This document shows, piece after piece, positions 32,524 to 60,906 of a stretch of 64,000 nucleotides of DNA. Under the pieces are notes generated by a model. It saw nothing but the letters and a program-made list of their open reading frames with translations, was not told the DNA's origin and ran no database searches. Each line of letters opens with the position of its first letter. The first letter of the stretch is position 1. Where the stretch lies: sequence record LC680885.1, one strand, 5' to 3'. The translations under genes were made by a program, and so were the position numbers.

Positions 32524-32970
32524 ATGAAATATTATAAGGTTAATTATAATGGTATATTGAAAATATTGAATCTAGATGATTTTGAAGATGATAGAATTAT
32601 TGAAACACTTAGTAATATTGAGTTATATTTAAAAGAAGATGAAGAAATTAGATTATTGGATTTATTTAAAAAGCCAACTATAGCAATGGACACTCGAATT
32701 ACAAAAGAAAGAGATAACCTTTATATGAATGGTCATCTCTTTTTAGAAGTTGAGAATGCATCATGTAAACTATGGAGTTACCATATTAATTTAAATGGTG
32801 ACGAAACATTAAATGAAATATATGAAAGGATATATAACGGATACGATAAAATTTTCTCTTTTAATAAAATGAGAGAAGATGGTCTATTATTTTTATATGA
32901 ATATGAACATTATACAGAAATATCTGAAAAAGAATATAAAGAAAATAAGGTTAAAGAAAATTTTAAATAA
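32524..32970 (+). CDS. C-terminal-tag family protein (MKYY..G subfamily)
   Basis: MKYYKV..GIL; ends EISEKEYKENKVKENFK. Confidence 0.75.
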   Translation: MKYYKVNYNGILKILNLDDFEDDRIIETLSNIELYLKEDEEIRLLDLFKKPTIAMDTRITKERDNLYMNGHLFLEVENASCKLWSYHINLNGDETLNEIYERIYNGYDKIFSFNKMREDGLLFLYEYEHYTEISEKEYKENKVKENFK

Positions 32971-32988
32971 AAAAGGAGATTTTAAATT

Positions 32989-33441
32989 ATGAAATATTAT
33001 ATTTTAACACAACAGGGGATTGCTGAAGTTTTAGGTATTGATAGTGAATCGGTTTATTGCTATAGAAATTTATTTAGAGATGATGAATTATATTTAAAAG
33101 AAGATGAAGAAATTAAATTTTCAGAAATTATTACTAATCAAACACCGGATATAGAATACAAAGTTGTTGGAACAAATAAAGATACCGTAACAGTGATAGC
33201 TTATATGGAAATAGATTTAGGTGAAGGAGATTATCATCAAATTGGATCTTGCAGAATGAAATTAGATAAAGATAGAACTCTAGAAGAAGTATACAATATT
33301 GTATATGAGAAAATGTCCAATAGAACTTTTTCATTCAATAAAGCTAAAGAAATGGGTATATCTTTATATGAAGAGAGTGATTATGAAGAAGTATCTAAAA
33401 AAGAATATAAAAAATACAAAGTAGAGAATAATTTTAAATAA
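32989..33441 (+). CDS. C-terminal-tag family protein
   Basis: Ends EVSKKEYKKYKVENNFK. Confidence 0.75.
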   Translation: MKYYILTQQGIAEVLGIDSESVYCYRNLFRDDELYLKEDEEIKFSEIITNQTPDIEYKVVGTNKDTVTVIAYMEIDLGEGDYHQIGSCRMKLDKDRTLEEVYNIVYEKMSNRTFSFNKAKEMGISLYEESDYEEVSKKEYKKYKVENNFK

Positions 33442-33461
33442 TGGAATGAGTTGTTATTGTT

Positions 33462-33941
33462 ATGGAAAAATATTATAGATTAACTTTAGAGGGTGTTAGT
33501 TTTATTTTAAATGATTGTGAAGAAAACGATATAGTTAAATCAACTTATAATGAAGATGAAAATTATGTACATTTAGAATCTTTATTAAATGTAGGAATGC
33601 CTTATGAAACTATATATTTTAAAGATAGACATAAAATAGTATTTAAAGAAAATGAAAATATATTCAAGACATTGATAAATTCAATTAAAAATAAATATTA
33701 TGACTTTGATGATAAAAATATGGAATTTCAAGTAGGCATTGGTGATGATGAAATAAAGGTCAAATCACCGATGCCAGTATTTTCTAAAGTGAATATATTT
33801 AATTTTAAAGTTAATAAAGAAATGGACATTATTGATTTTATGGACAATTATAAAATTAATGTATTAATTAAAGATAAGCATTACATTGAAATTACTGAAA
33901 AAGAATATAAAAATATTATAATTAAAAATACATTTAAATAA
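33462..33941 (+). CDS. C-terminal-tag family protein
   Basis: Ends EITEKEYKNIIIKNTFK. Confidence 0.75.
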   Translation: MEKYYRLTLEGVSFILNDCEENDIVKSTYNEDENYVHLESLLNVGMPYETIYFKDRHKIVFKENENIFKTLINSIKNKYYDFDDKNMEFQVGIGDDEIKVKSPMPVFSKVNIFNFKVNKEMDIIDFMDNYKINVLIKDKHYIEITEKEYKNIIIKNTFK

Positions 33942-33969
33942 TAAGGAGATTTTATAATTGAAATATTAT
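33933..33969 (+). repeat. 37-bp gene-junction direct repeat (identical copy at 34878-34914)
   Basis: TTTAAATAATAAGGAGATTTTATAATTGAAATATTAT. Confidence 0.85.
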
Positions 33970-34416
33970 GAATTTAATAAAAAAGGAATTATTAAAATAT
34001 TAGGATTAGATACAGCTTATTTAAGAGAAGATGAAGATATTTTTAGAGAAGGAAATCTTTATTTAAAAGAAAATGAATCAATAAAAATAAAAGATATTAT
34101 AACAAATAAAAAAGATATGAAATTTAATTGCAGTCTTTATGAAGGATCTGAAGATAGCTCATTAATGAAAGCTAATTTAACTTTCAGACATGGGTCAGGG
34201 CAACTTTTATTGAATATTGAATATATTGATTTAAAAGAAATAAAAGATCACACTGTTGAAGAAGTTTACAAATACGCTAAAGATTTAGTTTTAAATAAAA
34301 CATTTTCTTTTAATAAAGCTGAAGAGCTTGGTATATGTTTATATGAAGGAAAAGAATATGAAGAAATTACTGAGGAAGAATATAAAAAATACAAAGTAGA
34401 AAATACTTTTAAATAA
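33958..34416 (+). CDS. C-terminal-tag family protein
   Basis: Ends EITEEEYKKYKVENTFK. Confidence 0.75.
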   Translation: MKYYEFNKKGIIKILGLDTAYLREDEDIFREGNLYLKENESIKIKDIITNKKDMKFNCSLYEGSEDSSLMKANLTFRHGSGQLLLNIEYIDLKEIKDHTVEEVYKYAKDLVLNKTFSFNKAEELGICLYEGKEYEEITEEEYKKYKVENTFK

Positions 34417-34436
34417 TGAAATGAGGTGTTATTGTT

Positions 34437-34886
34437 ATGGACAAATATTATAAATTAACAGCGGAAGGTATATTTGATGTTTTCAAATTAGATAAAAAAC
34501 ACATTATATTCCCAGAAGATAAAAATACAATAATAGATTTCAGATCAAAGGAAGAACGTATAGAGAAAATTAATGAACTTATATACTTTAAAGATAATCA
34601 AGAAATAACAATAAACTCATTATCTAATTTAACAGACAATATCGTAATAGATAAATCAGGTTCTAAATATACATTTAACCATTTAATAGAAATATCATTC
34701 ACTACTTTTAGTCATAAAAAAAGATATAACAAAACAATCAATGTACCGAATGTATTTAAAGGAACTGTAAGAGAAAATAGTAGTAGAAGTGCCTTAGATA
34801 TACCGATAGATATCAACAATATTGATAAAATAGAATTAACATTTAAAGAATATAAAGATCTAGTAATAAAAGAAACTTTTAAATAA
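34437..34886 (+). CDS. C-terminal-tag family protein
   Basis: Ends ELTFKEYKDLVIKETFK. Confidence 0.75.
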   Translation: MDKYYKLTAEGIFDVFKLDKKHIIFPEDKNTIIDFRSKEERIEKINELIYFKDNQEITINSLSNLTDNIVIDKSGSKYTFNHLIEISFTTFSHKKRYNKTINVPNVFKGTVRENSSRSALDIPIDINNIDKIELTFKEYKDLVIKETFK

Positions 34887-34902
34887 TAAGGAGATTTTAT
34901 AA

Positions 34903-35352
34903 TTGAAATATTATAAATTAAATAAGGATGGTTATATTAAATTTTTAGGGTTAGATGTTTTGCCTGGACTTAAAACCTCAATTGTTGAAAAAGAAATAAA
35001 AAATAAAAACTTCATTGTCAAATATTGCAATGGAGCAGATTTTTGTTTTACATTAGATGAAATTAATAAAATGAAAAACAAAGATATTTACCCTAAACTT
35101 GGATTTGAAAGTCTAACTGAAAAAGTTAATCATGAAATAGAAAATAATCCAATAGTATTTGTTAATAGAAAATATGAAGATGCTAAAGCTTTAATTCATG
35201 TAGATTTAATTATTAATAATGAAGAAACTACATTAATGACTATGCCAAGATTTAATATTAATTTTTTAAATCATAATTTGTATATGGAACACTTTGATGA
35301 AATAACAGAGAAACAGTATAAAAATATTATGGTAAAAGATTCATTTAAGTAA
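34903..35352 (+). CDS. C-terminal-tag family protein
   Basis: Ends EITEKQYKNIMVKDSFK. Confidence 0.75.
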   Translation: MKYYKLNKDGYIKFLGLDVLPGLKTSIVEKEIKNKNFIVKYCNGADFCFTLDEINKMKNKDIYPKLGFESLTEKVNHEIENNPIVFVNRKYEDAKALIHVDLIINNEETTLMTMPRFNINFLNHNLYMEHFDEITEKQYKNIMVKDSFK

Positions 35353-35367
35353 AACTCAATTTAAATA

Positions 35368-35382
35368 TATATTATAAAATTG
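35368..35382 (+). promoter_or_regulatory. putative early promoter TATATTAT-N5-TG
   Basis: Consensus; hairpin GAAAGATGTAT/ATACATCTTTC follows. Confidence 0.75.
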
Positions 35383-35434
35383 TGAAAGATGTATGATACT
35401 TATACATCTTTCTAAAATATTTATTTAAAGAGAG

Positions 35435-35863
35435 GTGAAAAAGATAATGAGTTCTAATTTTGATTATTATATATTGCAATCGAGTATTTCAGAAGCTAGA
35501 AAAAGGATTAAGAATAATCTAGATGTAAATGGATATATGGTTATAAGACAAATATTTTTCAGTCATTTAGATTATAAAGATTATTATAATATGTATCATA
35601 AAGTAAATAATGTAGAAGATTATTACAATGATATTATATTAGAAAGTATTAAGGATATTATATTTGATGAAGAAGGTAAACTTAATGAAGAAGTAGCATT
35701 TAGTTTAATTAGAGGTTCTAATTCGAATATATGTGCTTTAATTAAAGATAATAAAGGCAATTACAAAATTTATAAAAAAGATAAATATGTAATTAAAGCT
35801 ATAGAAGATTTATTATCTGAGAAAGATTATAAAAGAATATTGGTTAAAAATACTTTTAAATAA
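35435..35863 (+). CDS. C-terminal-tag family protein
   Basis: Ends LLSEKDYKRILVKNTFK. Confidence 0.7.
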   Translation: MKKIMSSNFDYYILQSSISEARKRIKNNLDVNGYMVIRQIFFSHLDYKDYYNMYHKVNNVEDYYNDIILESIKDIIFDEEGKLNEEVAFSLIRGSNSNICALIKDNKGNYKIYKKDKYVIKAIEDLLSEKDYKRILVKNTFK

Positions 35864-35908
35864 TTTGAAAGTGAATGCAACTTACTTTTATTATATTACA
35901 AGTGAGAG

Positions 35909-36574
35909 TTGGTGATTTTATTGATAAAAATGCATTTAATAAACTTTCAAAAAAGGTCTATGAATAGTTATAAGAAGAATTTAAACACAATTGTACTTTT
36001 CATAGATTATGATAAAAATATTTTCAACCAAATTAATAATCAATTAGTTATAGATGTATTAGGTAATGATACTATAAGATTAAATAATGCTAATTATTCA
36101 TTAATGTTAGATGAGAAGATTTTTAGTTCTGAAAGGACAACAATTGATTTCTATAATAAAATAGTAAATAATGATATATTAAATATTATTAAAGAAAATA
36201 TATCTAATGTAGATAATTATTCTAAATTAAAAGAAATCAATAATATGACTGATAGTGAATTTAATGATATTATTAATAAAGATAATTTATTTAAATGTCA
36301 AAATAAATACTTCAGTATGAATAAAATACCTTATATAGAAAAAGAAATACCTGAAAGTTTTTATCTAGATCATTTTAAAGAGATTAATTTAGATTTTATA
36401 TTTGAGAAGCTTTTTGAAGAGAATAGAGAAGATGAAGAAAAATTAAAGTACGTTTATACTTTAGCTGAATTATTTCTAACACTCAAACAAGGTAAGAATA
36501 TATTTTATAATTATAATAAAGAGGTAGATAAGAAATATTATAGATCTATATTTATAAATTCTTTATTTAATTAA
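35909..36574 (+). CDS. hypothetical protein with a divergent C-terminal tag
   Basis: Ends EVDKKYYRSIFINSLFN; start uncertain. Confidence 0.6.
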   Translation: MVILLIKMHLINFQKRSMNSYKKNLNTIVLFIDYDKNIFNQINNQLVIDVLGNDTIRLNNANYSLMLDEKIFSSERTTIDFYNKIVNNDILNIIKENISNVDNYSKLKEINNMTDSEFNDIINKDNLFKCQNKYFSMNKIPYIEKEIPESFYLDHFKEINLDFIFEKLFEENREDEEKLKYVYTLAELFLTLKQGKNIFYNYNKEVDKKYYRSIFINSLFN

Positions 36575-36575
36575 T

Positions 36576-36893
36576 ATGATAAGAAAGGAGAGAAATAATA
36601 TGAAGAAAATATACGGATTTAAAATAAAATATAATAAAAAAGTGGTAGATACTTTCACTTTTGAAAGTTTTGAAGAAGCTATGAATAAACTAGAATTATC
36701 ATTATTAGAAATTTATGACTCAGAAGATTTTACAACTATGCAATTAATTTTAAACACATATGACATTGAAGAAATTAATGAAGATAGTTTTAAAGATAAA
36801 TTAAGACTAAATCATCTTAATCACATTAAGAATTTTAGTATTGAATTGTTTTCTAAATATATTAACAATAATAAGGAAGAAGGAATTGCGTAA
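36576..36893 (+). CDS. hypothetical protein (likely start at the second Met)
   Basis: AAGGAG RBS lies inside the called N-terminus. Confidence 0.6.
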   Translation: MIRKERNNMKKIYGFKIKYNKKVVDTFTFESFEEAMNKLELSLLEIYDSEDFTTMQLILNTYDIEEINEDSFKDKLRLNHLNHIKNFSIELFSKYINNNKEEGIA

Positions 36894-37108
36894 TGTTCGA
36901 GGAAAGTAAAGTACCATTTTCATTTATTTATAAAGAAACTAAATACTTCTTACACAGAAGAAATATTAAGAATTTCCCTAATGGAGATTCTGAATTCTTA
37001 TTGTATGGAGATGAAAATGGGAAGTCATTCATAATAGAAGAAAGTAAATTAGAAAACTTAATTGAACAACATGAAGTTGAAGTATCTTACGAAGAAGATA
37101 TTATTTAA
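36893..37108 (+). CDS. hypothetical protein
   Basis: Start overlaps the previous stop. Confidence 0.55.
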   Translation: MFEESKVPFSFIYKETKYFLHRRNIKNFPNGDSEFLLYGDENGKSFIIEESKLENLIEQHEVEVSYEEDII

Positions 37109-37111
37109 ATA

Positions 37112-37126
37112 TATATTATTAAATTG
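37112..37126 (+). promoter_or_regulatory. putative early promoter TATATTAT-N5-TG
   Basis: Consensus; GAGGTAATG hairpin starts at the final G. Confidence 0.75.
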
Positions 37127-37162
37127 AGGTAATGACATACAATTTGTCATTACCTCTAATAT
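37126..37162 (+). repeat. GAGGTAATG hairpin repeat, copy 4
   Basis: 12-bp stem plus TAATAT. Confidence 0.85.
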
Positions 37163-37189
37163 ATTAAACAATCAAAGGAGAAAACGATC

Positions 37190-37573
37190 ATGAAGAAATT
37201 TTTAGTATTACCATTATTATTCGTTTTATTATTAACAGGGTGCTCTCAAGCTGATAAAGTTAGTCAGAATATGTCTGAAGAGTCAGATAATTTTAATGTA
37301 GTTAGAAAAGTAACTGTCATTAATGCAATTAAAAATGACATAATATTCCAAATGTCTGGACGTATGTCTATTAAAGCAGATAATGAGGATAACCAATTAG
37401 AAATAGTTGTAGAAAATGAAGATGGCAAATATCAGAAACATATCATTGGTTTATCTGATAATGTTTCATATACTGTTGAAGATGTTACAACTAAAAATGT
37501 AAGTAAATATCAATATGAAATTAATTATAATCCTAAAATGTGGATCCCTGCAAAACCAGATTATAAAGATTAA
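37190..37573 (+). CDS. phage lipoprotein
   Basis: Lipobox LTGC; beta-rich body of a type common in Firmicutes phages. Confidence 0.8.
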   Translation: MKKFLVLPLLFVLLLTGCSQADKVSQNMSEESDNFNVVRKVTVINAIKNDIIFQMSGRMSIKADNEDNQLEIVVENEDGKYQKHIIGLSDNVSYTVEDVTTKNVSKYQYEINYNPKMWIPAKPDYKD

Positions 37574-37598
37574 TATAATAGAATGGAGAGTATGATTT

Positions 37599-37895
37599 AT
37601 GTCTAAGAAAAAGAAATTAGAAAAAAGACTTAATGTAAGAATTAATCAAGAACAAAAGAAAGCTATTTTAAAACGTGAAGATATCGATAGAATGGATTTT
37701 GAGTTCATTACATTAGATAAAGAGAAACATGATGAAGAAGAAAAATTTGATATCAAAGTAAAATCTAACGATAAGTTTTCTCTAATTATCATTATTAAAT
37801 TCTTTTCTAAATTGTTGAATTTTAGTATTAAAAGAGATAAGAAAAAAGAAGATATAAAAGACGGTAATGAAGATTCTAATTTAGATAAAGAATAA
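37599..37895 (+). CDS. basic hypothetical protein
   Basis: GGAG RBS. Confidence 0.55.
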   Translation: MSKKKKLEKRLNVRINQEQKKAILKREDIDRMDFEFITLDKEKHDEEEKFDIKVKSNDKFSLIIIIKFFSKLLNFSIKRDKKKEDIKDGNEDSNLDKE

Positions 37896-37901
37896 TAAAA
37901 A

Positions 37902-37934
37902 TGCCATAATACACTTAAATTGTGTATTATGGCA
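37902..37934. terminator. bidirectional terminator between convergent genes
   Basis: TGCCATAATACAC/GTGTATTATGGCA, 13 bp. Confidence 0.75.
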
Positions 37935-37940
37935 AATTAT

Positions 37941-38243
37941 TTATTTTTCAGGTTTAAAACGGTCTTTAAGTCTAGGATATAGACGTAGATGCGCTTTACG
38001 AGTAGGATCTGTAACAACAATTTGATTTGTTCTAGGATTTCTACGTTTACGCATATCTTCAGGTTTAACTTCAAGGACACCAATTTCAGGGATAATAGTT
38101 TTAGTTTGATCAGCATCATTTGCAGATTCAACAATTATTTCTATCATCTCATTATAAGCATCAACTAGTTCTCTTTGTGTTAATCCAGTACGTCTAGACC
38201 ATTCTCTAAAGAAGTGTTTTTGATCTTGAATTTGATTTAGCAT
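37941..38243 (-). CDS. hup: HU/IHF-family DNA-binding protein
   Basis: 100 aa; TGLTQ helix, IPEIGVLEV, RKRRNPRT arm, RLKD. Confidence 0.82.
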   Translation of the reverse strand: MLNQIQDQKHFFREWSRRTGLTQRELVDAYNEMIEIIVESANDADQTKTIIPEIGVLEVKPEDMRKRRNPRTNQIVVTDPTRKAHLRLYPRLKDRFKPEK

Positions 38244-38283
38244 TTTATTAGTTCCTTTCCATATAATATATTTTTAATTTTTT

Positions 38284-38295
38284 TAGAAAATTGTT
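38284..38295 (-). promoter_or_regulatory. putative late promoter AACA-N6-TA upstream of hup
   Basis: AACA-ATTTTC-TA on the minus strand; short motif. Confidence 0.35.
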
Positions 38296-38434
38296 AATAT
38301 TTTACTAGCTTTTTTCTAAATTTTATGATATAATATTGTTATGGAATTTCATAGTTGTAAAAAAATAATTTTTTGCAATAACTTAAATTTTTATATGGTT
38401 TCGAATTTTTAATTATAAGGAGAGTCAGATATCG

Positions 38435-40057
38435 TTGGGTAATTATTTAAGAAAAATTACGAAGAATATACAAGATGAGGTCAGTACAAAAGAGTCATTT
38501 AATGAGGATGTAATATACTTTAGGGAGAATGAAAACCTAGAAGATATTATATCTGATATTTACAAATCAGTAGAATTTATTAAAGGCGTAAAATTCATTG
38601 ATTGTAAAGTTGTTCCTCCAAGTGAAGTTTATGAGTACAATCAAATGACAGACAAACAATTTAAAGCAAGAGATTTTAGAAAAATCAACGTAGAAGAATC
38701 AAAACTATTAGAAGTTCAAATTACTGTAGAATTTGAATCAGCTGAAGGGGAAAAAGAATTATACACACATAAATTAGATTTCCCTGAACTTATAGAAGGT
38801 CAGTATTATTATATTAATGATAATAAGTTCTTCCCTATCTTACAATTAGCTGATACTGAATTCTATAAACCTAAAGCAAGTACAGTAGTAATGAAAAACT
38901 TATTACAACCATTATCAGTAAATGGTTCTAAAAAAGATGAACTTATTGATGATGATAAGAAAATGCCTAAGAAGTTAAGAGGTAGAACATTATACTTAGA
39001 AGTATTTAATAAAAATAAACCTGTTCCAGCATTTTTATTCTTTATTGCTAAAATGGGTCTAGATGAAACATTTGAATTCTTAGATATTAAAGAATATTGT
39101 GAATTAGTAGATACCAACGATGAAAAAGATGATGAACACTACTATTTTAGAATTAATAATAAAATAACTATTCAAGTTGATAAAGAATGGTTAGATCAAG
39201 ACGATAGATATAGAACTTCTATGGTCTTATGTATTAAAGATTTATTTAAAGGTATGAGAGCAGGATTAGATAAAGTATATGATAAAGAATTCTGGCTTAA
39301 GAATTTAGGATCTGTATTTAGTGGTTCTACTAACGTTGACACTAAAATTGAAAAATCTAATTCTATGATTTTATCATTTGATAGAATTTTAGATAGTCGT
39401 ACTAAAAATATTTCTAGATTAGATCCAGAAGATAAAGAATCAACTTATCATGTAGTTAAATACATGTTTAAAAACTTTGATAATCTTAATTTATTAGATA
39501 ATACAGATTTAGCTAATAAACGTTTAAGAGTATTAGAATACTTAACTTATCCACTGAATAGAAAGAACTCTGATACATCTTATCGTATGATTAATTTCAC
39601 AGATAAGAAACGTACAATTAAAAATCTTAAAGGATTATTCTCAGGTGTACCTCGTGATTTCTTATTAAAAACTATAGGAACATCTGAAGGAATTAGATAT
39701 TCCAATGCAGTTAATACAATTGACTTATTTACTAGAATTCTTAAAATGACTAAAGCAGGTCCACAAACTGCTGTTGATACTAGTAAACCATCTATTAGAA
39801 CTATTAATATCAATAATACTTATTTCGGTAGAATTGATTTAATAGCAACATCTTCAAACAATCCAGGTATTACACGTACATTAACACCATTCTGTGAGGT
39901 TAAAGATCCTGGTGAGAATGGTTCATTCTATTTTGAAAATAAACCTAACATCAGAGAAAATATTGACACAGATAATTTAGATAAACTAGAGAAAGAATCT
40001 GAAGACAATGAAGTTGTATTAGATATTAAAGAAATTGTAGAAGAGGATGACGAATAA
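38435..40057 (+). CDS. rpoB: Non-virion RNA polymerase beta subunit, N-terminal half
   Basis: LDFPELIEGQYYYIN..FPILQL, DLANKRLR, YFGRIDLIATSSNNPGITRTL (beta GRVCPIETPEG.N.GL region); size fits phiKZ gp123/AR9 gp105-type subunits. Confidence 0.8.
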   Translation: MGNYLRKITKNIQDEVSTKESFNEDVIYFRENENLEDIISDIYKSVEFIKGVKFIDCKVVPPSEVYEYNQMTDKQFKARDFRKINVEESKLLEVQITVEFESAEGEKELYTHKLDFPELIEGQYYYINDNKFFPILQLADTEFYKPKASTVVMKNLLQPLSVNGSKKDELIDDDKKMPKKLRGRTLYLEVFNKNKPVPAFLFFIAKMGLDETFEFLDIKEYCELVDTNDEKDDEHYYFRINNKITIQVDKEWLDQDDRYRTSMVLCIKDLFKGMRAGLDKVYDKEFWLKNLGSVFSGSTNVDTKIEKSNSMILSFDRILDSRTKNISRLDPEDKESTYHVVKYMFKNFDNLNLLDNTDLANKRLRVLEYLTYPLNRKNSDTSYRMINFTDKKRTIKNLKGLFSGVPRDFLLKTIGTSEGIRYSNAVNTIDLFTRILKMTKAGPQTAVDTSKPSIRTININNTYFGRIDLIATSSNNPGITRTLTPFCEVKDPGENGSFYFENKPNIRENIDTDNLDKLEKESEDNEVVLDIKEIVEEDDE

Positions 40058-41367: not shown

Positions 41368-41429
41368 ATTTTTTAGAATAACGGTCTTATCAGATCGTTA
41401 TTCTTATTAAATAAATATGACTGGAGACA

Positions 41430-51193: not shown

Positions 51194-51196
51194 ATA

Positions 51197-51790: not shown

Positions 51791-51820
51791 TCCCAATGAG
51801 ATGAATTATTCTCATTGGGA
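51791..51820 (+). terminator. terminator-like hairpin
   Basis: TCCCAATGAGA/TCTCATTGGGA. Confidence 0.6.
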
Positions 51821-51854
51821 TTATTTAATTACTTAATTAGGAGATGAAAAGGAT

Positions 51855-52685: not shown

Positions 52686-52700
52686 GGAGTTGAAACGGAT

Positions 52701-53201: not shown

Positions 53202-53226
53202 AATATAACTAAAGAGAGGTAATTTC

Positions 53227-53853
53227 ATGAGAAAAACAGTAAATCTATTTGATTGGTATATCTATAAAAATGGAGAATATACATTGATTCCTTACTTCTT
53301 CAGATTAGCTTCAGGATTATTAATATTAATTGTATTCTCATCTTTAACTGTAATTAATATTAAATTATCTTTTATATCATTAATGGTAACAATTCCAACA
53401 TTTTTGATAATTAATCTATTAATTTATTTATATTTTAATAAAAATTGTCTTAGAGAATATGGAGAAATAAATAAATCTTTTAAAGTGAAAGATAAATATT
53501 ATTCTTTTTGGTATATTGAATTAAATGAAGATAATGAGGTTTTTAAAGAAGCTTTTAATAATTTTAAAAATGAACACGAATGGATTATAGAAGAAGAAAA
53601 TATAAAAAATCTATCAGAAATACTGTCACAAAAATTTTTTATAAAAGACACTAAAATAGTAGAGACTGTAGCGAGAGAAAAAAGAAAACATTGGAAGAAC
53701 AATATTGACACTAATAGACTGATAACTTATAGAGAGTTTCTTAAATATAGAAAGAATAAAAAGAAATTTGAAGAGTCTAAGAAGTTAGAAAAGGAAATAA
53801 AAGAGTTTCAAGATTATTACAATTTAAACACTAAAGGAGAAATTAAAAAATGA
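53227..53853 (+). CDS. membrane protein of the HWxNxIxTN family
   Basis: Two TM helices; HWKNNIDTN..IKEFQDYY. Confidence 0.65.
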   Translation: MRKTVNLFDWYIYKNGEYTLIPYFFRLASGLLILIVFSSLTVINIKLSFISLMVTIPTFLIINLLIYLYFNKNCLREYGEINKSFKVKDKYYSFWYIELNEDNEVFKEAFNNFKNEHEWIIEEENIKNLSEILSQKFFIKDTKIVETVAREKRKHWKNNIDTNRLITYREFLKYRKNKKKFEESKKLEKEIKEFQDYYNLNTKGEIKK

Positions 53854-54314
53854 ATACTAAAATAATCGCAGCATTTCCGGGTACAGGTAAATCTTACATC
53901 AAAAATAATATCTCATTCTTAAAAACATCTGATTCAGATTCAACTAGTTTTTCATGGATAATTAAAGATGGAGAAAAAGTTAGAAATCCTAAATTTCCAA
54001 CGAATTATATTAGTTATATTAAGGATCTCTATTATAAAAATGTAATGGATTATATTTTCGTATCAACTCATAAAGAAGTTATCCAAGAGTTGATTGATAA
54101 TAATTTAGAATTTGTAGTAGCTTATCCAAAACGTTCAGATAAAGAATTATATTTAAAGAGATACAAAGAAAGAGGTTCAGATAGTAAATTTATTGAGCTT
54201 CTTGATAATATGTTTGATAGTTTTATAGATGATATAGAGAATAGAGTTCCTGAAGAAAACAGAATTGAACTTAATCATAATGAATATTTAGCTAACGTAT
54301 TAGATAAAATTTAA
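53850..54314 (+). CDS. small P-loop NTPase / kinase-like protein
   Basis: IIAAFPGTGKS Walker A; YLKRYKERG lid-like segment. Confidence 0.7.
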   Translation: MNTKIIAAFPGTGKSYIKNNISFLKTSDSDSTSFSWIIKDGEKVRNPKFPTNYISYIKDLYYKNVMDYIFVSTHKEVIQELIDNNLEFVVAYPKRSDKELYLKRYKERGSDSKFIELLDNMFDSFIDDIENRVPEENRIELNHNEYLANVLDKI

Positions 54315-54331
54315 ATAAGGAGAAATTAAAA

Positions 54332-54790
54332 ATGAGATACTTTAAAGGTATAGTAGCAGGAAAAGACTTTTTCTTAAAAGCAGATAATGAAGAAAATGCC
54401 ATTAAGGAATTAGCATCAAAAGAAATTAATTCTATAGGATCTTTTACAATGTTAAGTAATGAAAAACAGAAATACCTAATAATTTTCTTTAATGAAGATG
54501 AAGATAAATTTGTTGTTGGAAATGGATTAGAATCATATATATCATTAGACAGTCTTAAATCTGAATTAGAATCTAAAGATTTAGAATGTTATTATTTAGA
54601 TTTAGGTAATACAGATAATATCGAGATAAACGGTATTATAAAAAATCAAGAATACACATTAACAGAAATAATAATGGAAAGTATTAAATTAACTATGAAT
54701 GATTTTTATCAACAAGTTATAAATTCTGTATTAACTGAATTAACTGAAAAAGAATACAAAAATTCAATAGTTGTTAAAAATTTTAAATAA
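54332..54790 (+). CDS. C-terminal-tag family protein
   Basis: MRYF..; ends ELTEKEYKNSIVVKNFK. Confidence 0.72.
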   Translation: MRYFKGIVAGKDFFLKADNEENAIKELASKEINSIGSFTMLSNEKQKYLIIFFNEDEDKFVVGNGLESYISLDSLKSELESKDLECYYLDLGNTDNIEINGIIKNQEYTLTEIIMESIKLTMNDFYQQVINSVLTELTEKEYKNSIVVKNFK

Positions 54791-54809
54791 CTAGGAAGGA
54801 ATAAAAATA

Positions 54810-55280
54810 GTGAGAAATAAAAAAAGAAGCATAGATAGTTTGATAAATAATAATCTAGAATTACCAATTGAGATTACTGAAAATTATATAAATAATTTTA
54901 TATACAAATCATTAACTGCTATAAATAAGAAAAAAGAAATAAAACCAAATCAAACTTATATAATTAATCATAAGAATGAATTATTTAATAAAGCAGATAA
55001 TTTCATAAATTGTATTTTAGAATTATTAAAAGGTGATGTGGGTACTTTAATAGATAAAAAAGATTTAAAGTTAAAAAGAAATGTAAAGAAAGACAATATA
55101 AGTAATTGTCTTACAATATATACTATTGTAGAAACTTTAACTTACAATAATTCTATAACAATGATGATGGTAAAAAATGTAAATAATACCAATAAGGAAG
55201 TAACTGGTGAACTAATATTTGATATTAATATAAGTGATAAATTAGGTAAAGATAATTACAATGAAAATATTTATATTTAA
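54810..55280 (+). CDS. hypothetical protein
   Basis: GTG-start ORF. Confidence 0.55.
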   Translation: MRNKKRSIDSLINNNLELPIEITENYINNFIYKSLTAINKKKEIKPNQTYIINHKNELFNKADNFINCILELLKGDVGTLIDKKDLKLKRNVKKDNISNCLTIYTIVETLTYNNSITMMMVKNVNNTNKEVTGELIFDINISDKLGKDNYNENIYI

Positions 55281-55294
55281 TTACTATTTAAATA

Positions 55295-55309
55295 TATATT
55301 ATATAAATG
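55295..55309 (+). promoter_or_regulatory. putative early promoter TATATTAT-N5-TG
   Basis: Consensus; no clear hairpin. Confidence 0.7.
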
Positions 55310-55335
55310 AAGTTAATTAAAATACAGGAGATGAA

Positions 55336-55683
55336 TTGGATATGTTAAACGATACTAAAAAGATTTTAGACAGAATATACGACAAAATAAATGGTGATTT
55401 AATTGTTATTTCAGAGTGTAAAGATCTATTTGATAAGGAATTAAATTACACTTTAACTGAAGGTAATGAAGAAACAACAAATCTTGATTATTTGGCAGAT
55501 TCTTTAATTGTAGTTGCTTCAGATATATTTACTTTAAAAGAAGTACTTAATATTGACGAAGAAACTATTAATAATGAACTATTAGCAGAATTTAAACTAA
55601 GCTATAGAATGATACAAAATTTTCATATGAAATTAGAATTAAATAGTTATAAATTAAAAAAGATTAAAACCTCGGTTGAATAA
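55336..55683 (+). CDS. hypothetical protein
   Basis: ORF with RBS. Confidence 0.6.
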   Translation: MDMLNDTKKILDRIYDKINGDLIVISECKDLFDKELNYTLTEGNEETTNLDYLADSLIVVASDIFTLKEVLNIDEETINNELLAEFKLSYRMIQNFHMKLELNSYKLKKIKTSVE

Positions 55684-55702
55684 ATATAGGAGATGATTAG
55701 GA

Positions 55703-56188
55703 ATGAATTATTTAAAGAATGAAAAAGGGGAGGTCTTTCCAGTCAATGAAGAAGGAATGGAGAATATTATATTCTTTCTTCTAGACTACTCACAGAAAAA
55801 TGATTATAACACAATGAATTTGATTAAAGAGATAAATGATCACGTGATGAAAGGCGAAAATATAAGTAATAAATTTATTAATGAAAAGACAAAAGAAACG
55901 ATATTAACATTAGGTAAAGTAAAAGGTAATTTAACTAATGAATTAGCTAGAAGTGGTTATATAGTTAATTTCTCTAGAAATAAAATATCACTATCGATAT
56001 ATGTAAAAAATAATAGTTTTAAATTAGTAAGAATTTCAGATCATAATATTAATAAAAAAATAAATAAAAAAGGTGTAATCAGTAATAGATTTGACGGACA
56101 ATTAGTATGTAAAAATAATCTAGTTAAATCTTCTGATTTGAAAAAGCATGGAATTGATATTAATGAAGGAATATATTATTTAGAATAG
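55703..56188 (+). CDS. hypothetical protein (RISDH motif)
   Basis: ORF with RBS. Confidence 0.6.
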   Translation: MNYLKNEKGEVFPVNEEGMENIIFFLLDYSQKNDYNTMNLIKEINDHVMKGENISNKFINEKTKETILTLGKVKGNLTNELARSGYIVNFSRNKISLSIYVKNNSFKLVRISDHNINKKINKKGVISNRFDGQLVCKNNLVKSSDLKKHGIDINEGIYYLE

Positions 56189-56189
56189 G

Positions 56190-56483
56190 ATGAAACTATA
56201 TATGAAAAAGATAATAATGTTTTTAGGTATTTTGTTACTAACAACGGTATTGGTCGGTTGTGGAGAAAGTGTTGATTCAAAAGATAAAAAAGATTCAATC
56301 AAAACAGTAACTATTTATAGTAAAGACGGTAAAGTATTACATCAATATGAAGGAAAAGTTAGTGCTGAGAGAGTAACGGATAACAAATTTACTAAAATTG
56401 ATATAGACGGTAAGAAATTAAGAGTTGTAAATGCAGATGTAGTTATTGAAGAGAAAGGTATTGAGAAATTTGAAACAAAATAA
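56190..56483 (+). CDS. lipoprotein
   Basis: MKKIIMFLGILLLTTVLVGC lipobox. Confidence 0.72.
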   Translation: MKLYMKKIIMFLGILLLTTVLVGCGESVDSKDKKDSIKTVTIYSKDGKVLHQYEGKVSAERVTDNKFTKIDIDGKKLRVVNADVVIEEKGIEKFETK

Positions 56484-56493
56484 AGATTAAGTA

Positions 56494-56508
56494 TATATTA
56501 TAATTATG
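56494..56508 (+). promoter_or_regulatory. putative early promoter TATATTAT-N5-TG
   Basis: Consensus; hairpin AGAAAGATAT/ATATCTTTCT follows. Confidence 0.75.
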
Positions 56509-56560
56509 AAGAAAGATATTATCATATATCTTTCTAATAAAATTAATGGAGGAATTTGTT

Positions 56561-56857
56561 ATGGCAAAATTAAATGAAGAAGTATTAAGAGACTTTCAAG
56601 TAAAAACTGAAATTGATGGAGAATTTGAAGTAATGGAATCTGATGAGCTTGGTGTTGATGAAGCTTATGAAATTGAATTAATTAAAGAATTGGGATTAGA
56701 TGTCGATTCAAGTGTATTCTCTTATGCAATATCAGAAAAAGATGATGAAGAAAATACGTATACTTTAGAATATAGTCATGAAGGCGTTCTATTAACTATT
56801 CATGATATCGATTTTGAAAATGGTATTCATGATACTATTTATAAAAATGTAATTTAA
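56561..56857 (+). CDS. acidic hypothetical protein
   Basis: GGAGG RBS just upstream. Confidence 0.6.
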   Translation: MAKLNEEVLRDFQVKTEIDGEFEVMESDELGVDEAYEIELIKELGLDVDSSVFSYAISEKDDEENTYTLEYSHEGVLLTIHDIDFENGIHDTIYKNVI

Positions 56858-56866
56858 TGATTTAAG

Positions 56867-56899
56867 TATAGCTGATATCTTTAACGGATATCAGCTATA
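56867..56899 (+). terminator. intrinsic terminator-like hairpin
   Basis: TATAGCTGATATC/GATATCAGCTATA plus T-run. Confidence 0.7.
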
Positions 56900-56940
56900 T
56901 TATTTTTATTTTTTTACTTAAAGGAGATGAAAAGGATAAT

Positions 56941-57552
56941 ATGAATTATTTTGAATTGGAATATACAGGTTTAATTAATAATAATAAATTAGATAATCTA
57001 GTTCTACACAAACAAGAAAATGAAGAAATTGAATCGGGTGTTTTAAATATGGTTTTATTTAAATTGTATCTAAAAGAATTCTATAATGATAATATGGATG
57101 ATAATGATTTATGTAAGAAACTAAAAATGGAAATAAGAAGTATTCATAGTTATAATAATTCAGAAATTTATATTAATGAAGACTTTGCTGAAATATATGA
57201 TGGTATTAATCCGAATAATAATATTAAATCAGGAAAAATAAATAAAGATTATGAATATTTATTTAAATTTATTAAAGATAATATAAATGAAAAAGATTTA
57301 AATAATATACATGTGATTAAATTTACAACATTTGAAATAGAGAAATATAAACCTGTTGTGATTTTTATAAACTCAGATAAACTTAGAATTAAGACCAATA
57401 AATCAATTAGTAGATATACATCAACAAATGAATTTGTATTCTATAATATTTCAAGCGAAAGTTTATATACATTAATGAAAAATACAAATAGAATAAGAAA
57501 TATAACGGAAAAAGAATATAAAAAAGAATTAGTTAAAAGGAGTTTTTTATAA
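56941..57552 (+). CDS. C-terminal-tag family protein
   Basis: Ends NITEKEYKKELVKRSFL. Confidence 0.72.
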   Translation: MNYFELEYTGLINNNKLDNLVLHKQENEEIESGVLNMVLFKLYLKEFYNDNMDDNDLCKKLKMEIRSIHSYNNSEIYINEDFAEIYDGINPNNNIKSGKINKDYEYLFKFIKDNINEKDLNNIHVIKFTTFEIEKYKPVVIFINSDKLRIKTNKSISRYTSTNEFVFYNISSESLYTLMKNTNRIRNITEKEYKKELVKRSFL

Positions 57553-58100
57553 TGTATGAAGTTAATAAAAAATTTAAATATGCTAAAAGAGATAAAGAAT
57601 TCACATTATTCCACCATAAATCAAAAGAAAAAATAACTGATTCATTTATAATTAATAATTATATTTCATATGTATTATATCAATGCTACGAAAGAACACC
57701 AGGAAATGCAGAAGTTTGGTTGGAAATTAATGATATAAATAATATAAAAGGTGATTTCTTATTTAAATTTATGTTTGACAACAGACCTTCTTTTGGTTCT
57801 AATTATTTTCCTAAGTGTAAATTAAATATACAAGATAACAGTGATAATAATATTGTAACTATTGAATTTAGTGATAAATATAAAAGACATAATTTTATTC
57901 TAGAAGAAATATCTAAATTTAATAATGTTCATATTAATTTTTATGAAGAAGTATTATTTACTAATGAAGATGAAGAATTCAAGTTATTAAAGAATGTATT
58001 TAAAACTGATAACATTAAATATTACCAAAATAAAGATTTAATTAGTTATATTTCAGACAAAGAAGCTAGAAAAATTTTAGTAAAAGAAAACTTTAAATAG
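57552..58100 (+). CDS. C-terminal-tag family protein
   Basis: Ends YISDKEARKILVKENFK. Confidence 0.72.
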   Translation: MYEVNKKFKYAKRDKEFTLFHHKSKEKITDSFIINNYISYVLYQCYERTPGNAEVWLEINDINNIKGDFLFKFMFDNRPSFGSNYFPKCKLNIQDNSDNNIVTIEFSDKYKRHNFILEEISKFNNVHINFYEEVLFTNEDEEFKLLKNVFKTDNIKYYQNKDLISYISDKEARKILVKENFK

Positions 58101-58116
58101 AATAGGGGCAAATAAA

Positions 58117-58650
58117 TTGAATAAATATTTTAAATTTAAATTAAATAATAAAAGTGATTACGATGTATTTAAATTTTCAGGAAATGAAGAAGAAATAAGC
58201 GATTCTAAAATTATAGAGTCTTATTTTGATTATATGTTTAATTATTATATAAATGAAGCAATACCTGACTCCAGTATGATTAATATTGCTGTATTTACTG
58301 AAGGTAAAAGAAAAAGATTATTGAGATTTACTATAGATAAACCACCAATTTATATAAAAGAGCCAGTTAGTACTTTATTTATGAATGAAAATGATGAAGA
58401 TAAACAAATTAATTTTAAAGAATTTAACGAAATTAAAAAATTTATACACGAAAAGATTATGGAATTGAATAAAGGTGAATTTTATATTTATATTGATTAT
58501 AATTTTGATTATTCTTATAGAATAGATTACGATGATGTATTTGATAAAATATTATTTAATAAAAATAATCTAAATCTTTATTCATCATTTATTAAAGAAA
58601 CAGATGAAAATGAATATAAAAATTATCTAGTAAGAGAGAATTTTAAATAA
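58117..58650 (+). CDS. C-terminal-tag family protein
   Basis: Ends ETDENEYKNYLVRENFK. Confidence 0.72.
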   Translation: MNKYFKFKLNNKSDYDVFKFSGNEEEISDSKIIESYFDYMFNYYINEAIPDSSMINIAVFTEGKRKRLLRFTIDKPPIYIKEPVSTLFMNENDEDKQINFKEFNEIKKFIHEKIMELNKGEFYIYIDYNFDYSYRIDYDDVFDKILFNKNNLNLYSSFIKETDENEYKNYLVRENFK

Positions 58651-58667
58651 GGAAGTGAGACAGATAA

Positions 58668-59444
58668 ATGGAATATGTTATGATAAATAAATTATTAACA
58701 AAAAATGATTCATCTGAATTAAAAATAAACATGGTTAAACTATATAAAGAGGAAGAAGACTTTTTCAATTTCTTTTTAAACTTTATTATAGAATATAATT
58801 CATATTATATAGGAAATTATAAATACTTTTATAGTATAGATTCATTATCAGATTATAATTCAGATTATCAAATAAATGGAAATCCTTATGTGCCATTTGA
58901 GGAAGGGATAAAGGTAAATGAAGTCATTCATATTTATAAAAATAAATTATTTAGGAATATAAGTAAAGATATTGAAAATAGAATAACCGTACTTTATGTA
59001 GAAGACAAAGAAGACGATATTTCCTATTATATATTAATATCTAATTACTTTAATAAAAAATTTAAAAAAGAATATAAAGAAGAACTTCCCGATAAAGAAA
59101 AATTGTTAGCTAGACTTATAGTAAGATCCTTTCTAAATGAAAAAATTTTATTAGATTCACATTCAGAATTTTTAGTTATTAAAGATAAAGAAAAATTGAA
59201 TAATTTAATTAATAATTTAATGAAAAATCAAAAATACAAAATTTTAAATTTTGATTTCTTAAGTAATAGGGAATTAAAATATAATGGAGTAATATTTAAT
59301 ACAAATTTATATGATAATAAACTAATCCTGAAGTATTTAAAAGGAATAGACTACAAAGATATTATTAATAAAGATAAAGAAAAAATTACGTTTATAAATG
59401 AAAAAGGATATAAAAAACTAGCATTGAAAGAATCATTTAAATAA
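58668..59444 (+). CDS. C-terminal-tag family protein
   Basis: Ends FINEKGYKKLALKESFK. Confidence 0.72.
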   Translation: MEYVMINKLLTKNDSSELKINMVKLYKEEEDFFNFFLNFIIEYNSYYIGNYKYFYSIDSLSDYNSDYQINGNPYVPFEEGIKVNEVIHIYKNKLFRNISKDIENRITVLYVEDKEDDISYYILISNYFNKKFKKEYKEELPDKEKLLARLIVRSFLNEKILLDSHSEFLVIKDKEKLNNLINNLMKNQKYKILNFDFLSNRELKYNGVIFNTNLYDNKLILKYLKGIDYKDIINKDKEKITFINEKGYKKLALKESFK

Positions 59445-59522
59445 ATAATAAATATTCTCATCCATTCATTATATAATAACTTTTAATTATATAATAATTT
59501 TTAGAATGGATGAGATGCTTTT

Positions 59523-60182
59523 ATGAGTAATTATTTATATCGTTTTAACAAAGAGAATGTAAATATCTTCTATCATAAAAGGACTAATAATGGTCATAAA
59601 ATGTTATTTAATAATAGTAATGATAAAGATAGATCTATATACTTAATAAATACTGATGAAGAAATCAATAATATGGAACTAGTATCTAAATATATTGCTG
59701 GAAAAGTATTTGAAATACTAAACCAAGAAAATATGAAAATAGTACATATGGATTTCTTTAATAGTAAATTAGAATTCTTTATAAGTAGATCATCCAAGAA
59801 TAAATATATAATGAATATGTATTTTAGTTTAAAAAGTTATAATGATCTAATAGAAAATGAAAAAGAATTTATAGATAGTGTTAATGAGCTTAATTTAGAC
59901 TTTTTAAAATCAGTTTCTTTAGATCAAGACAATAATCATGTATTAGATATGACATTAATATTTTTAATAGATAAAAATAAAATAGATGAATTTATTAAAA
60001 ATCTATTTTACATTAATTATGTAAAGATAATAGAATTTATAATAGATACTATATCAGTATATGCAGATGATTACAAGAAATTTAATGAAGAAATAAATAT
60101 TCTTTTGGATCATAGAAATTTTGTAGAGGAAATAACATATAAAGAATATAAAAAGATAATGACAAAAGAGATGTTTATTTAA
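59523..60182 (+). CDS. C-terminal-tag family protein
   Basis: Ends EITYKEYKKIMTKEMFI. Confidence 0.72.
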   Translation: MSNYLYRFNKENVNIFYHKRTNNGHKMLFNNSNDKDRSIYLINTDEEINNMELVSKYIAGKVFEILNQENMKIVHMDFFNSKLEFFISRSSKNKYIMNMYFSLKSYNDLIENEKEFIDSVNELNLDFLKSVSLDQDNNHVLDMTLIFLIDKNKIDEFIKNLFYINYVKIIEFIIDTISVYADDYKKFNEEINILLDHRNFVEEITYKEYKKIMTKEMFI

Positions 60183-60195
60183 GGAGTAATTAACT

Positions 60196-60906
60196 ATGAA
60201 GATTTCAGCCAATAAAGAATTATTAGGAAAGAAAGTTATACCTTTAGGTTTTAAACAACTTAATAACTTATATAAAGATCATGATTATGTATATTTAAGA
60301 ATTCCTGAAATATTTAATGTATTTGATAAGTATCAATTTAAAGATGATAAATTTGTATATCTTAAAACAGAAATAAAACCCAGTACTATTGTAGATTTAA
60401 TAGATTCTTTATCAAGTGGTTTTAATTGGTTAATAAATGAATATATTTCTAATGATATACTAAATATACATTATATAAAGAAAAATTTATTAGACATTTC
60501 CAATAGTGAATATAAAACTCTAGAAGAAACAAGATCTCAGTTAGATTTAGAATTAGAATTCATAAGTAGTAATGAAAAACAAAGAAAGCAATCTAATATT
60601 TTAATAAAGGATATTCATAAAGAAATAAATTATATAAGGAATGAATACACAAAAGTATTCACTCTTAAGAAAAGTAAAACCAGAAATAATAAACCAATAA
60701 AAATAAAAATTAGAAATTTATATGATGAAGATCCAATATCTATATTAAAAATAATATTAGACTTAGGAGAAGAATATTGTATGAATAGTACTATATTTAA
60801 CGCATTTACTTATTCATTAATGTTAACAAATAATTTAGATTTCATAGACGAAAAAGAATTTCAGGATATAGTTAAGAAAGAGAAAGTGAAAAATACTTTC
60901 ATTTAA
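60196..60906 (+). CDS. C-terminal-tag family protein (4-aa insertion in tag)
   Basis: Ends FIDEKEFQDIVKKEKVKNTFI. Confidence 0.7.
   Translation: MKISANKELLGKKVIPLGFKQLNNLYKDHDYVYLRIPEIFNVFDKYQFKDDKFVYLKTEIKPSTIVDLIDSLSSGFNWLINEYISNDILNIHYIKKNLLDISNSEYKTLEETRSQLDLELEFISSNEKQRKQSNILIKDIHKEINYIRNEYTKVFTLKKSKTRNNKPIKIKIRNLYDEDPISILKIILDLGEEYCMNSTIFNAFTYSLMLTNNLDFIDEKEFQDIVKKEKVKNTFI

What the first reader, a model, noticed from the sequence alone, without database searches (positions are those of the whole stretch)
32524..60906. At least 14 dissimilar early proteins carry one C-terminal tag: candidate modular adaptor/effector system
Seen: seven ORFs at 32524-35863, one at 54332 and six at 56941-60906 end in [IL][TS]xKEYKxxx[VI]KxxF[KIL]-stop, with register Y at -11, V/I at -6 and F at -2 (60196 has a 4-aa insertion in the tag); weaker versions end 24954, 27524 and 35909. 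Many also begin M(x)[KRN]Y[YF]. The 120-240 aa in between are largely unalignable outside the first cluster. A motif pinned to the free C-terminus across unrelated bodies suggests a docking or targeting signal. Inference: a constant amphipathic helix binds one hub (protease/chaperone adaptor, phage replication compartment or membrane scaffold) while the variable cores engage different host targets such as defence proteins, loosely like poxvirus ankyrin-PRANC adaptors. Alternatively the N- and C-terminal motifs fold into a small shared domain with a hypervariable insert.
Basis: partly seen in the sequence, partly recalled or inferred. Interest (0 to 1): 0.85.

Follow-up and report, generated by a model that had tools for sequence, protein, structure and literature searches.

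The report
Phage gene family sharing one tail
A giant Staphylococcus phage devotes about one gene in six to an undescribed family of proteins that look unrelated to each other except for the same 20-residue ending, which probably lets them all dock to one common partner.

Summary
The window is Staphylococcus phage S6, a uracil-DNA jumbo phage. The tail also ends at least 43 S6 genes, about 16% of the genome, of 68-629 aa, mostly in tandem arrays. It never occurs internally: 41 of 228 genes carry it against 0.74 expected.

Codon use shows selection on the protein, not the DNA. With the tail removed, 42 proteins fall into 35 unlinked groups. Pfam, PHROGs, NCBIfam and PDB give no hit. The tail is found only in ten Staphylococcus jumbo phages.

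In the one good model, the tail is a strand plus helix built into the fold. About half the members also share an N-terminal aromatic strand. Arrays are remodelled by recombination inside these conserved ends.

My reading is a fast-diverging paralogue superfamily. Its terminal module is a constant handle, most likely for one shared interaction. No partner or function is shown.

The parts
24954..25508 (+). W1, 184 aa, weak tail (V -6, K -5, F -2)
   Evidence: SA1 orthologue keeps a weak tail
25618..27507 (+). W4, 625-629 aa, the largest member, with a minimal tail. An early-promoter 8-mer lies at 25539-25546.
   Evidence: orthologues only in the ten Staphylococcus jumbo phages; SA1 orthologue keeps the tail pattern
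27524..28078 (+). W2, 184 aa, clear tail with V at -11
   Evidence: matrix score 18.5
28096..28836 (+). W3, 246 aa, weak tail
32524..32970 (+). A1, 148 aa, starts directly after ligA. It has the N-terminal aromatic strand and a strong tail, and it is the modelled member.
   Evidence: pLDDT 82; strand 130-133 and helix 135-146 are the tail
32989..33441 (+). A2, 150 aa, full-length homologue of A1 and A4
33462..33941 (+). A3, 159 aa, strong tail. The right-hand boundary of the segment that differs in phage DC4 lies in its tail-coding end.
33958..34416 (+). A4, 152 aa. Its junction with A5 is 90-93% identical in DNA to the A2-A3 junction.
34437..34886 (+). A5, 149 aa, 78% identical to its orthologue in SA1
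34903..35352 (+). A6, 149 aa
35435..35863 (+). A7, 138-142 aa, preceded by the early-promoter 8-mer at 35368-35375
35909..36574 (+). A8w, 204-221 aa, degenerate tail (F at -2, N at -1)
54332..54790 (+). B1, 152 aa, a solitary member with the N-terminal motif and a strong tail
56865..56901 (+). terminator-like hairpin just upstream of the C array
56941..57552 (+). C1, 203 aa; orthologues are 80-93% identical
   Evidence: model unusable
57552..58100 (+). C2, 182 aa, A at -11. It is a paralogue of C3, shown only through an SA1 intermediate.
58117..58650 (+). C3, 177 aa
58668..59444 (+). C4, 258 aa
59523..60182 (+). C5, 219 aa, the most conserved member (98% to MarsHill, 74% to SA1)
60196..60906 (+). 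C6, 236 aa, tail with a 4-residue (one helical turn) insertion that SA1 also keeps
60913..60953 (+). terminator-like hairpin closing the C array

Best explanation
These genes belong to one clade-specific superfamily of accessory proteins of the Staphylococcus uracil-DNA jumbo phages. S6 has at least 43 copies.

Shown:
- The family signature is a terminal module of about 20 residues that must end the polypeptide. It is a short strand, a capped helix of about ten residues, and a final aromatic residue plus a basic residue.
- About half of the members also start with an aromatic strand.
- The bodies between the two ends have diverged past recognition. Each is nevertheless kept by purifying selection.
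- The arrays change by recombination inside the conserved ends.

Inferred:
- The terminal module is a constant handle built into each protein.
- It most likely makes one common contact, either with a single phage or host partner or with other family members.
- The diversified bodies supply different specificities, probably during the early, host-takeover phase.
For: - Family size and strict end-anchoring.
- Selection on the protein: codon sharing at identical residues is only 1.09-1.10 times the codon-usage expectation.
- The tail is more conserved than the body in 19 S6-SA1 orthologue pairs, 0.62 against 0.48, p = 5e-4.
- dN/dS against MarsHill is 0.18 in tails and 0.29 in bodies, so the bodies are functional genes.
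- Conserved charged positions (K at -13, -10, -5 and -1; E at -14 and -12) are not what folding alone would keep.
- The one-turn insertion in C6, conserved in SA1, keeps the helical phase.
- In the A1 model the tail is strand 130-133 plus helix 135-146. pLDDT is 94 at 131-140 and 64 for the last 8 residues.
- A natural 91-aa relative keeps both ends and lacks the middle sheet.
- The N-terminal motif co-occurs with the tail, p = 8e-8.
- C2 and C3 are linked only through an SA1 intermediate.
- Recombination at the conserved ends: junctions are 90-93% identical against 40-55% in the bodies. The S6/DC4 replacement is bounded by the first codons of A1 and the tail of A3.
- The early-promoter 8-mer of the MarsHill preprint (10.1101/2020.12.14.422802) lies before W4, A7 and two arrays outside the window.
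Against: - No partner has been identified, and nothing here shows binding.
- Only one body class has a usable model; C1 failed at pLDDT 34. That the module is integrated in the fold is therefore shown for A-type only.
- Common descent of all bodies is not shown: 42 proteins stay in 35 (S6 alone) or 34 (with SA1) groups once the tail is removed.
- Tail positions tolerate many substitutions between orthologues. That would also fit a purely structural element.
- Early expression rests on a promoter motif, not on data, and the C array lacks that motif.
Confidence: 0.5

Rival explanations
1. These are ordinary divergent paralogues. All members descend from one gene and share one fold. The tail, and the N-terminal strand, are simply the elements needed for folding, so they are the last parts still recognisable. 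There is no common partner.
For: - The tail is integrated in the A1 model with high confidence.
- The N-terminal motif co-occurs with the tail.
- Sub-clusters are homologous over their full length, and C2-C3 are linked through an intermediate. This shows that bodies can diverge beyond direct detection.
- The genes lie in tandem arrays with unequal recombination.
- Tail positions vary between orthologues.
Against: - Lengths run from 68 to 629 aa.
- The A-type profile gives under 1% hhalign probability to every other body.
- The BFVD fold search with the A1 model finds only three A-type proteins and no other class.
- The conserved residues are mostly charged surface types.
- Not one of about 43 copies is extended or trimmed at the C-terminus. 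Terminal helices of ordinary families rarely show that.
Confidence: 0.28
2. The tail is a free docking or sorting tag on unrelated cores. It would be a linear signal read by one receptor, for example a C-terminal degradation signal for an AAA+ machine that clears early proteins together, or a compartment or scaffold address.
For: - Strict anchoring to the free C-terminus and the invariant aromatic residue at -2.
- More than 30 body types that cannot be linked.
- Lower model confidence for the last 8 residues.
- A MoxR-type AAA and VWA pair lies next to one array. This is adjacency only.
Against: - The strand and the first helical turns are confidently packed in A1.
- The N-terminal motif co-occurs with the tail.
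- There is no amphipathic signature.
- The last residue is basic in 28 of 33 tails, unlike the non-polar ends of the classical bacterial degradation tags (my own knowledge).
- No receptor candidate has been identified.
Confidence: 0.15
3. The tail is a virion-packaging signal like the capsid targeting sequence of T4 internal proteins. It would load diverse proteins into the head for injection into the next cell.
For: [quoted passage not shown] That is the closest phage precedent for one short terminal signal on diverse bodies.
Against: - The signal is at the opposite terminus.
- The genes sit among replication and transcription genes behind early-type promoter motifs.
- None of the 15 proteins detected in DC4 virions is a family member (PMC10638138). 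That proteome is shallow.
Confidence: 0.04
4. The conservation is in the nucleic acid, not the protein. The repeated 3' ends would be a promoter, a translational-coupling element or a recombination site that happens to be translated.
For: - The junction of tail, spacer and next start is 90-93% identical between the two A-array units.
- A recombination boundary falls in it.
Against: - Across the family, synonymous codons differ freely: codon sharing is 1.09-1.10 times expectation.
- The register is fixed to the stop codon, not to the next gene.
- The tail is also present where no member follows (B1, A7, C6, W genes).
Confidence: 0.03

Closest known systems
T4-type internal proteins with the capsid targeting sequence (PMC3012670)
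   Same: Many phage proteins with unrelated bodies share only one short terminal signal. They are encoded in a variable locus and are thought to meet different host defences.
   Different: That signal is N-terminal, is removed by the head protease, and sends proteins into the capsid. Here the element is C-terminal and is part of the fold in the one model. The genes look early, and no member is in the published DC4 virion proteome.
   Same: A large viral paralogue set with a constant C-terminal module and variable target-binding bodies.
   Different: PRANC is a recognisable domain with a known partner. No Pfam family of any kind matches the 41 members. The module here is only about 20 residues, and its partner is unknown.
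Lineage-specific expansions in jumbo phages, for example about 35 copies of a zinc ribbon in Bacillus phage G (PMC7824862)
   Same: One small module is amplified to tens of copies in a single jumbo-phage lineage.
   Different: There the whole small domain is conserved. Here only the terminal about 20 residues (plus or minus an N-terminal strand) are kept, and the bodies span 68-629 aa.
Parasite multigene families defined by conserved termini and hypervariable middles, for example Theileria Tpr (PMC10730637; title and abstract only)
   Same: Tandem arrays with a conserved C-terminal part and a hypervariable remainder.
   Different: Those are eukaryotic membrane proteins in an immune-evasion context, and the conserved part is a large domain.
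Promoter/stem-loop cassettes that mediate gene shuffling in T4-type hyperplastic regions (my own knowledge, not checked here)
   Same: Repeated junction sequences between small early genes act as recombination points that reshuffle gene content.
   Different: Those repeats are non-coding regulatory DNA. Here the repeat is coding and conserved at the protein level.

Membership tests
T4-type capsid-targeting-sequence internal proteins | Short conserved terminal signal on otherwise diverse proteins | tested here: met
   One tail sits on 34-35 body groups that cannot be linked
T4-type capsid-targeting-sequence internal proteins | Signal is N-terminal and removed by the prohead protease | tested here: not met
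   The conserved element is at the extreme C-terminus. Cleavage cannot be tested here.
T4-type capsid-targeting-sequence internal proteins | Proteins present in virions | tested here: inconclusive
   None of the 15 proteins in the DC4 virion proteome is a member (PMC10638138), but coverage is shallow
Poxvirus ankyrin-PRANC adaptors | PRANC/F-box-like domain and ankyrin repeats recognisable by profile | tested here: not met
   No Pfam family at E<=0.001 for any of 41 members
C-terminal degradation tags of AAA+ proteases | Exposed, unstructured C-terminal peptide ending in non-polar residues | tested here: not met
   The last residue is K or R in 28 of 33 tails. The strand and helix are packed in the A1 model. 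Binding is not testable here.
Membrane-targeting C-terminal amphipathic helices (MinD/FtsA type) | High helical hydrophobic moment at the extreme C-terminus | tested here: not met
   Moment 0.20-0.28 against a background mean of 0.26-0.29 and a 90th percentile of 0.45-0.50
Single-fold paralogous protein family | Homology detectable beyond the terminal motif | tested here: not met
   Met only inside small sub-clusters. After tail removal there are 35 groups of 42 proteins, the A-type profile gives under 1% hhalign probability to all other bodies, and one extra link (C2-C3) appears through SA1.
Single-fold paralogous protein family | Same three-dimensional fold in all members | tested here: inconclusive
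   The A1 model is good (pLDDT 82) and the C1 model is unusable (pLDDT 34). BFVD returns only A-type matches.
Any described protein family or solved structure | Profile or fold match | tested here: not met
   Pfam, PHROGs and NCBIfam: no family matched at E<=0.001. PDB by sequence: E 0.36. PDB by fold: best E 0.29, TM 0.28 or less.
Non-coding recombination/regulatory cassettes (T4 hyperplastic-region type) | Repeat is non-coding DNA conserved at the nucleotide level | tested here: not met
   The repeat is coding. Synonymous codons differ freely, 1.09-1.10 times expectation. Recombination at the repeat is seen.

The most novel reading that the evidence does not exclude
The tail is a true C-terminal address code. 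One receptor, phage- or host-encoded, would read the free end (aromatic at -2, basic at -1, on a capped helix). It would thereby collect, time or place more than 40 different early proteins. This would be a bacterial-virus counterpart of the short C-terminal sorting signals of eukaryotic organelles, or of the T4 capsid targeting sequence. It would make 16% of a jumbo-phage proteome a single regulated set.
Probability: 0.22. Interest if true: 0.85.

Novelty: new variant of a known kind. Interest (0 to 1): 0.62.

Why it matters
About 80% of the genes of these Staphylococcus jumbo phages have no assigned function. This result groups roughly one sixth of the genome into a single recognisable set with a simple membership test: the last 20 residues.

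If the tail is a common handle, finding its one partner would give an entry point to some 40 unknown proteins at once. It would also show how a uracil-DNA phage takes over its host. That host-takeover question includes the still missing uracil-glycosylase inhibitor noted in PMC10303552, although no link to it is shown here.

The arrays also give a clear natural example of gene turnover by recombination within conserved coding ends.

Tried and rejected
Searches that found nothing:
- Pfam, PHROGs and NCBIfam on 41 members: no family matched at E<=0.001.
- PDB by profile and by fold: nothing.
- The 5.8-billion-protein word search with A2 found only itself. A search on the last 40 residues of A3 found only itself and one orthologue.
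- The exhaustive profile search of 1.84 billion representatives gave 17 hits. Those inspected are A-type proteins of 91-159 aa, and one weak hit (E 5.7e-06) to a 2599-aa protein was not examined.
- The IMG/VR pattern scan gave 0 matches.
- tblastn with two tails and with W4 found only the ten Staphylococcus jumbo phages.

Limits and failures:
- The second structure job (C1 with eight close orthologues) failed at pLDDT 34, so no second body class could be modelled. Model coordinates are not returned, so I could not check the N-strand/C-strand contact.

Readings rejected:
- Membrane-targeting amphipathic helix.
- DNA-level element.
- Strong positive selection on the C-array bodies: dN/dS is 0.06-0.52.
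- Body isoelectric point does not differ from other phage proteins.

Technical: loci fetched in one parallel batch did not all reach the script machine and had to be fetched again.

Slips I must declare:
- They covered T4 capsid targeting, bacterial degradation tags, and clamp-, SSB- and membrane-binding tails.
- One search printed the fused DC4 ORF as it stands, with the position of its internal tail-like match.


Full report
**Origin.** The window is 100% identical to Staphylococcus phage S6 (LC680885.1, 267,055 bp), record coordinate minus 186000. S6 is a jumbo myovirus of the AR9/PBS1 type that uses uracil in its DNA. Close and distant relatives are DC4, PALS_2, MarsHill, Madawaska, LY01, AH12, PB50, Machias and SA1. 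G+C is 19-29% and nearly all genes are on the + strand. Every gene in the finding is annotated 'hypothetical protein'.

**The observation.**
- Over 33 strong S6 tails the column counts are: -2 F 32; -6 V 24, I 6; -10 K 30; -13 K 28; -12 E 26; -14 E 23; -11 Y 14, I 10, V 5; -5 K 22, R 6; -1 K 25. Together this is about 39 bits over 20 columns.
- Position -15 is D, T or S in 29 of 33, and -4/-3 are rich in N and G. That is the usual make-up of a helix N-cap and C-cap (inference from established helix-capping rules).
- Small departures: C2 has A at -11, C4 has L and C5 has T at -6, and C6 carries a 4-residue insertion.

- A weight matrix built from the 13 window tails was run over S6 pieces fetched separately.
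- Tandem ORFs with the same ending lie at record 58.3-63.4 kb (4 genes) and 66.3-77.9 kb (15 genes, 160-288 aa).
- Three small ORFs with weaker tails lie at 46-48 kb, and two 300-aa proteins at 179.4-181.3 kb.
- With the four W genes upstream of ligA in the window, S6 has at least 43 tail-bearing genes among 273 annotated.
- I read the rest of the genome from 145 to 179 kb and part of the late region (251.2-255.3 kb). Only one degenerate case turned up. The stretches at 255.3-267 kb were not read for tails.

**More than chance, and pinned to the end.**
- The best of 58,832 internal positions scores 13.5, while about 27 C-termini score 14 or more.
- No copy is displaced by 1-3 residues.
- A minimal end pattern closes 41 of 228 genes against 0.74 expected.

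**Protein, not DNA.**
- Synonymous codons vary freely in the tails.
- Where two tails have the same residue they share the codon only 1.09-1.10 times as often as codon usage predicts, also between arrays.
- The register is tied to the stop codon. The tail is also present where no family member follows.

**The bodies.**
- With the last 22 residues removed, BLASTP and phmmer link only A1/A2/A4 and a few other pairs.
- Iterative profile searches leave 42 proteins in 35 groups. Adding 23 SA1 members and six relatives leaves 34 groups that contain S6 members.
- An A-type profile gives under 1% hhalign probability to every other body. With full sequences only the last 17-46 residues align.
- Pfam, PHROGs and NCBIfam match none of the 41 members.
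- The 1.84-billion-protein profile search returns 17 proteins; those inspected are A-type, and one weak 2599-aa hit was not examined.
- Tail and W4 searches find only the ten Staphylococcus jumbo phages. IMG/VR has no match to the tail pattern.

**Signs of common descent.**
- An aromatic pair in the first 14 residues occurs in 20 of 42 members against 18 of 188 other genes (p = 8e-8).
- C2 and C3 show no direct similarity. Both match one SA1 protein over their full length (E 1.6e-25 and 1.3e-06) and merge in the pooled clustering. Paralogue bodies in this family can therefore diverge beyond direct detection.

**Structure.**
- The A1 model, built from eight aligned window paralogues, has mean pLDDT 82 and pTM 0.68.
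- Its elements are strand 3-6, helix 8-14, helix 23-30, strand 34-37, a three-stranded meander at 51-90, helices 96-107 and 113-118, then strand 130-133 and helix 135-146, which are the tail.
- pLDDT is 94 for residues 131-140 and 64 for the last eight.
- It matches no PDB fold (best E 0.29). In BFVD it matches only three A-type proteins of 148-156 aa.
- A natural 91-aa relative keeps the N-terminal part and the last third but lacks the meander. This fits ends that form a unit around a replaceable insert.
- The C1 model failed (pLDDT 34), so other classes remain unseen.
- The tail's helical hydrophobic moment is not above background.

**Selection.**
- Against MarsHill, dN/dS is 0.29 for family bodies, 0.18 for tails and 0.20 for neighbouring genes. 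The bodies are maintained genes, not decaying ones.
- Against SA1, 19 orthologue pairs average 48% identity in bodies and 62% in tails (p = 5e-4).
- The one-turn insertion of C6 is kept in SA1.

**Array dynamics.**
- The A2-A3 and A4-A5 units are 90-93% identical in DNA across tail, spacer and next start, but 40-55% in the bodies.
- S6 and DC4 are 93-97% identical on both sides of a replaced segment. Its limits fall in the first codons of A1 and in the tail-coding end of A3.
- In that segment S6 has three genes and DC4 has two units read as one ORF. I count this as one fusion, and the first unit's tail is incomplete.
- SA1 keeps five A-type genes, the W genes, five C genes and about ten D genes.

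**Context and timing.**
- The neighbours are gyrA (with an intein), a RecA-like protein, NAD ligase, non-virion RNA polymerase subunits, an HU-like protein, a glycosyltransferase and TelA.
- The 8-mer reported as the early promoter of MarsHill (10.1101/2020.12.14.422802) lies in gaps before W4 and A7, and before two arrays outside the window.
- The C array instead sits between two terminator-like hairpins, with no such motif directly upstream.
- The published DC4 virion proteome (15 proteins) holds no member.
- I found no paper that describes the family.

**Interpretation.**
- The descriptive core is secure. This is one clade-specific superfamily marked by a C-terminal module, expanded to about 16% of the genes and remodelled by recombination in its conserved ends.
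- That the module is a shared interaction handle is inferred from three things. The register to the free end is unbroken in about 43 copies. Charged surface-type residues are conserved. The helical phase is preserved across an insertion.
- Against a free tag on unrelated cores stand its packing in the A1 model, the paired N-terminal motif and the hidden homology of C2 and C3.
- No partner is known.

Noticed in passing
window 25618-25632 and 51-65; L009 ORFs starting at 34443, 35358, 22545, 26979, 30293 and 5520 (- strand): A recurrent 15-nt leader ends on the annotated start codon of several genes, so the mechanical ORFs begin M-[K/N]-W-I-M. There are 3 matches in the window against 0.26 expected. 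It may be a start-region or promoter-class element. Three of the genes carrying it are weak-tail members.
   Followed up: partly
window 63-3617: The gyrase A gene is interrupted by an intein with a LAGLIDADG endonuclease domain.
   Followed up: no
L009 24061-24885 (S6_1470), next to the reverse-transcriptase-like ORF L009 22545-24059: This ORF ends with a degenerate tail in the right register (Y -11, K -10, Y -8, L -7) but has L instead of F at -2.
   Followed up: no
L007 3625-7168 (S6_0430 and S6_0440): A MoxR-type AAA ATPase and a VWA-like (DUF2201) protein are encoded a few genes upstream of the first array outside the window. This is adjacency only.
   Followed up: partly
window 56865-56901 and 60913-60953: Two long terminator-like hairpins bracket the C array exactly (3 found against 0.4 expected). 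The array's promoter is not evident.
   Followed up: partly
window gaps at 7901, 8693, 22681, 25539, 35368, 37112, 43147, 45199, 45504, 51197, 55295 and 56494: The published early-promoter 8-mer sits 30-80 nt ahead of + strand starts with strongly similar flanks. The overall count of the bare 8-mer is not above chance (40 against 42), so the flanks carry the signal.
   Followed up: partly
L012 4001-4894 (DC4 UFVDC4_00167): Two A-type units are read as a single 297-aa ORF in DC4. Whether this is a real fusion or a sequencing artefact is unknown.
   Followed up: partly
L007 21977-22582 (S6_0620): This member carries a second, internal tail-like stretch, the best internal matrix score in the genome at 13.5. 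It could be a relic of an older fusion of two units.
   Followed up: no
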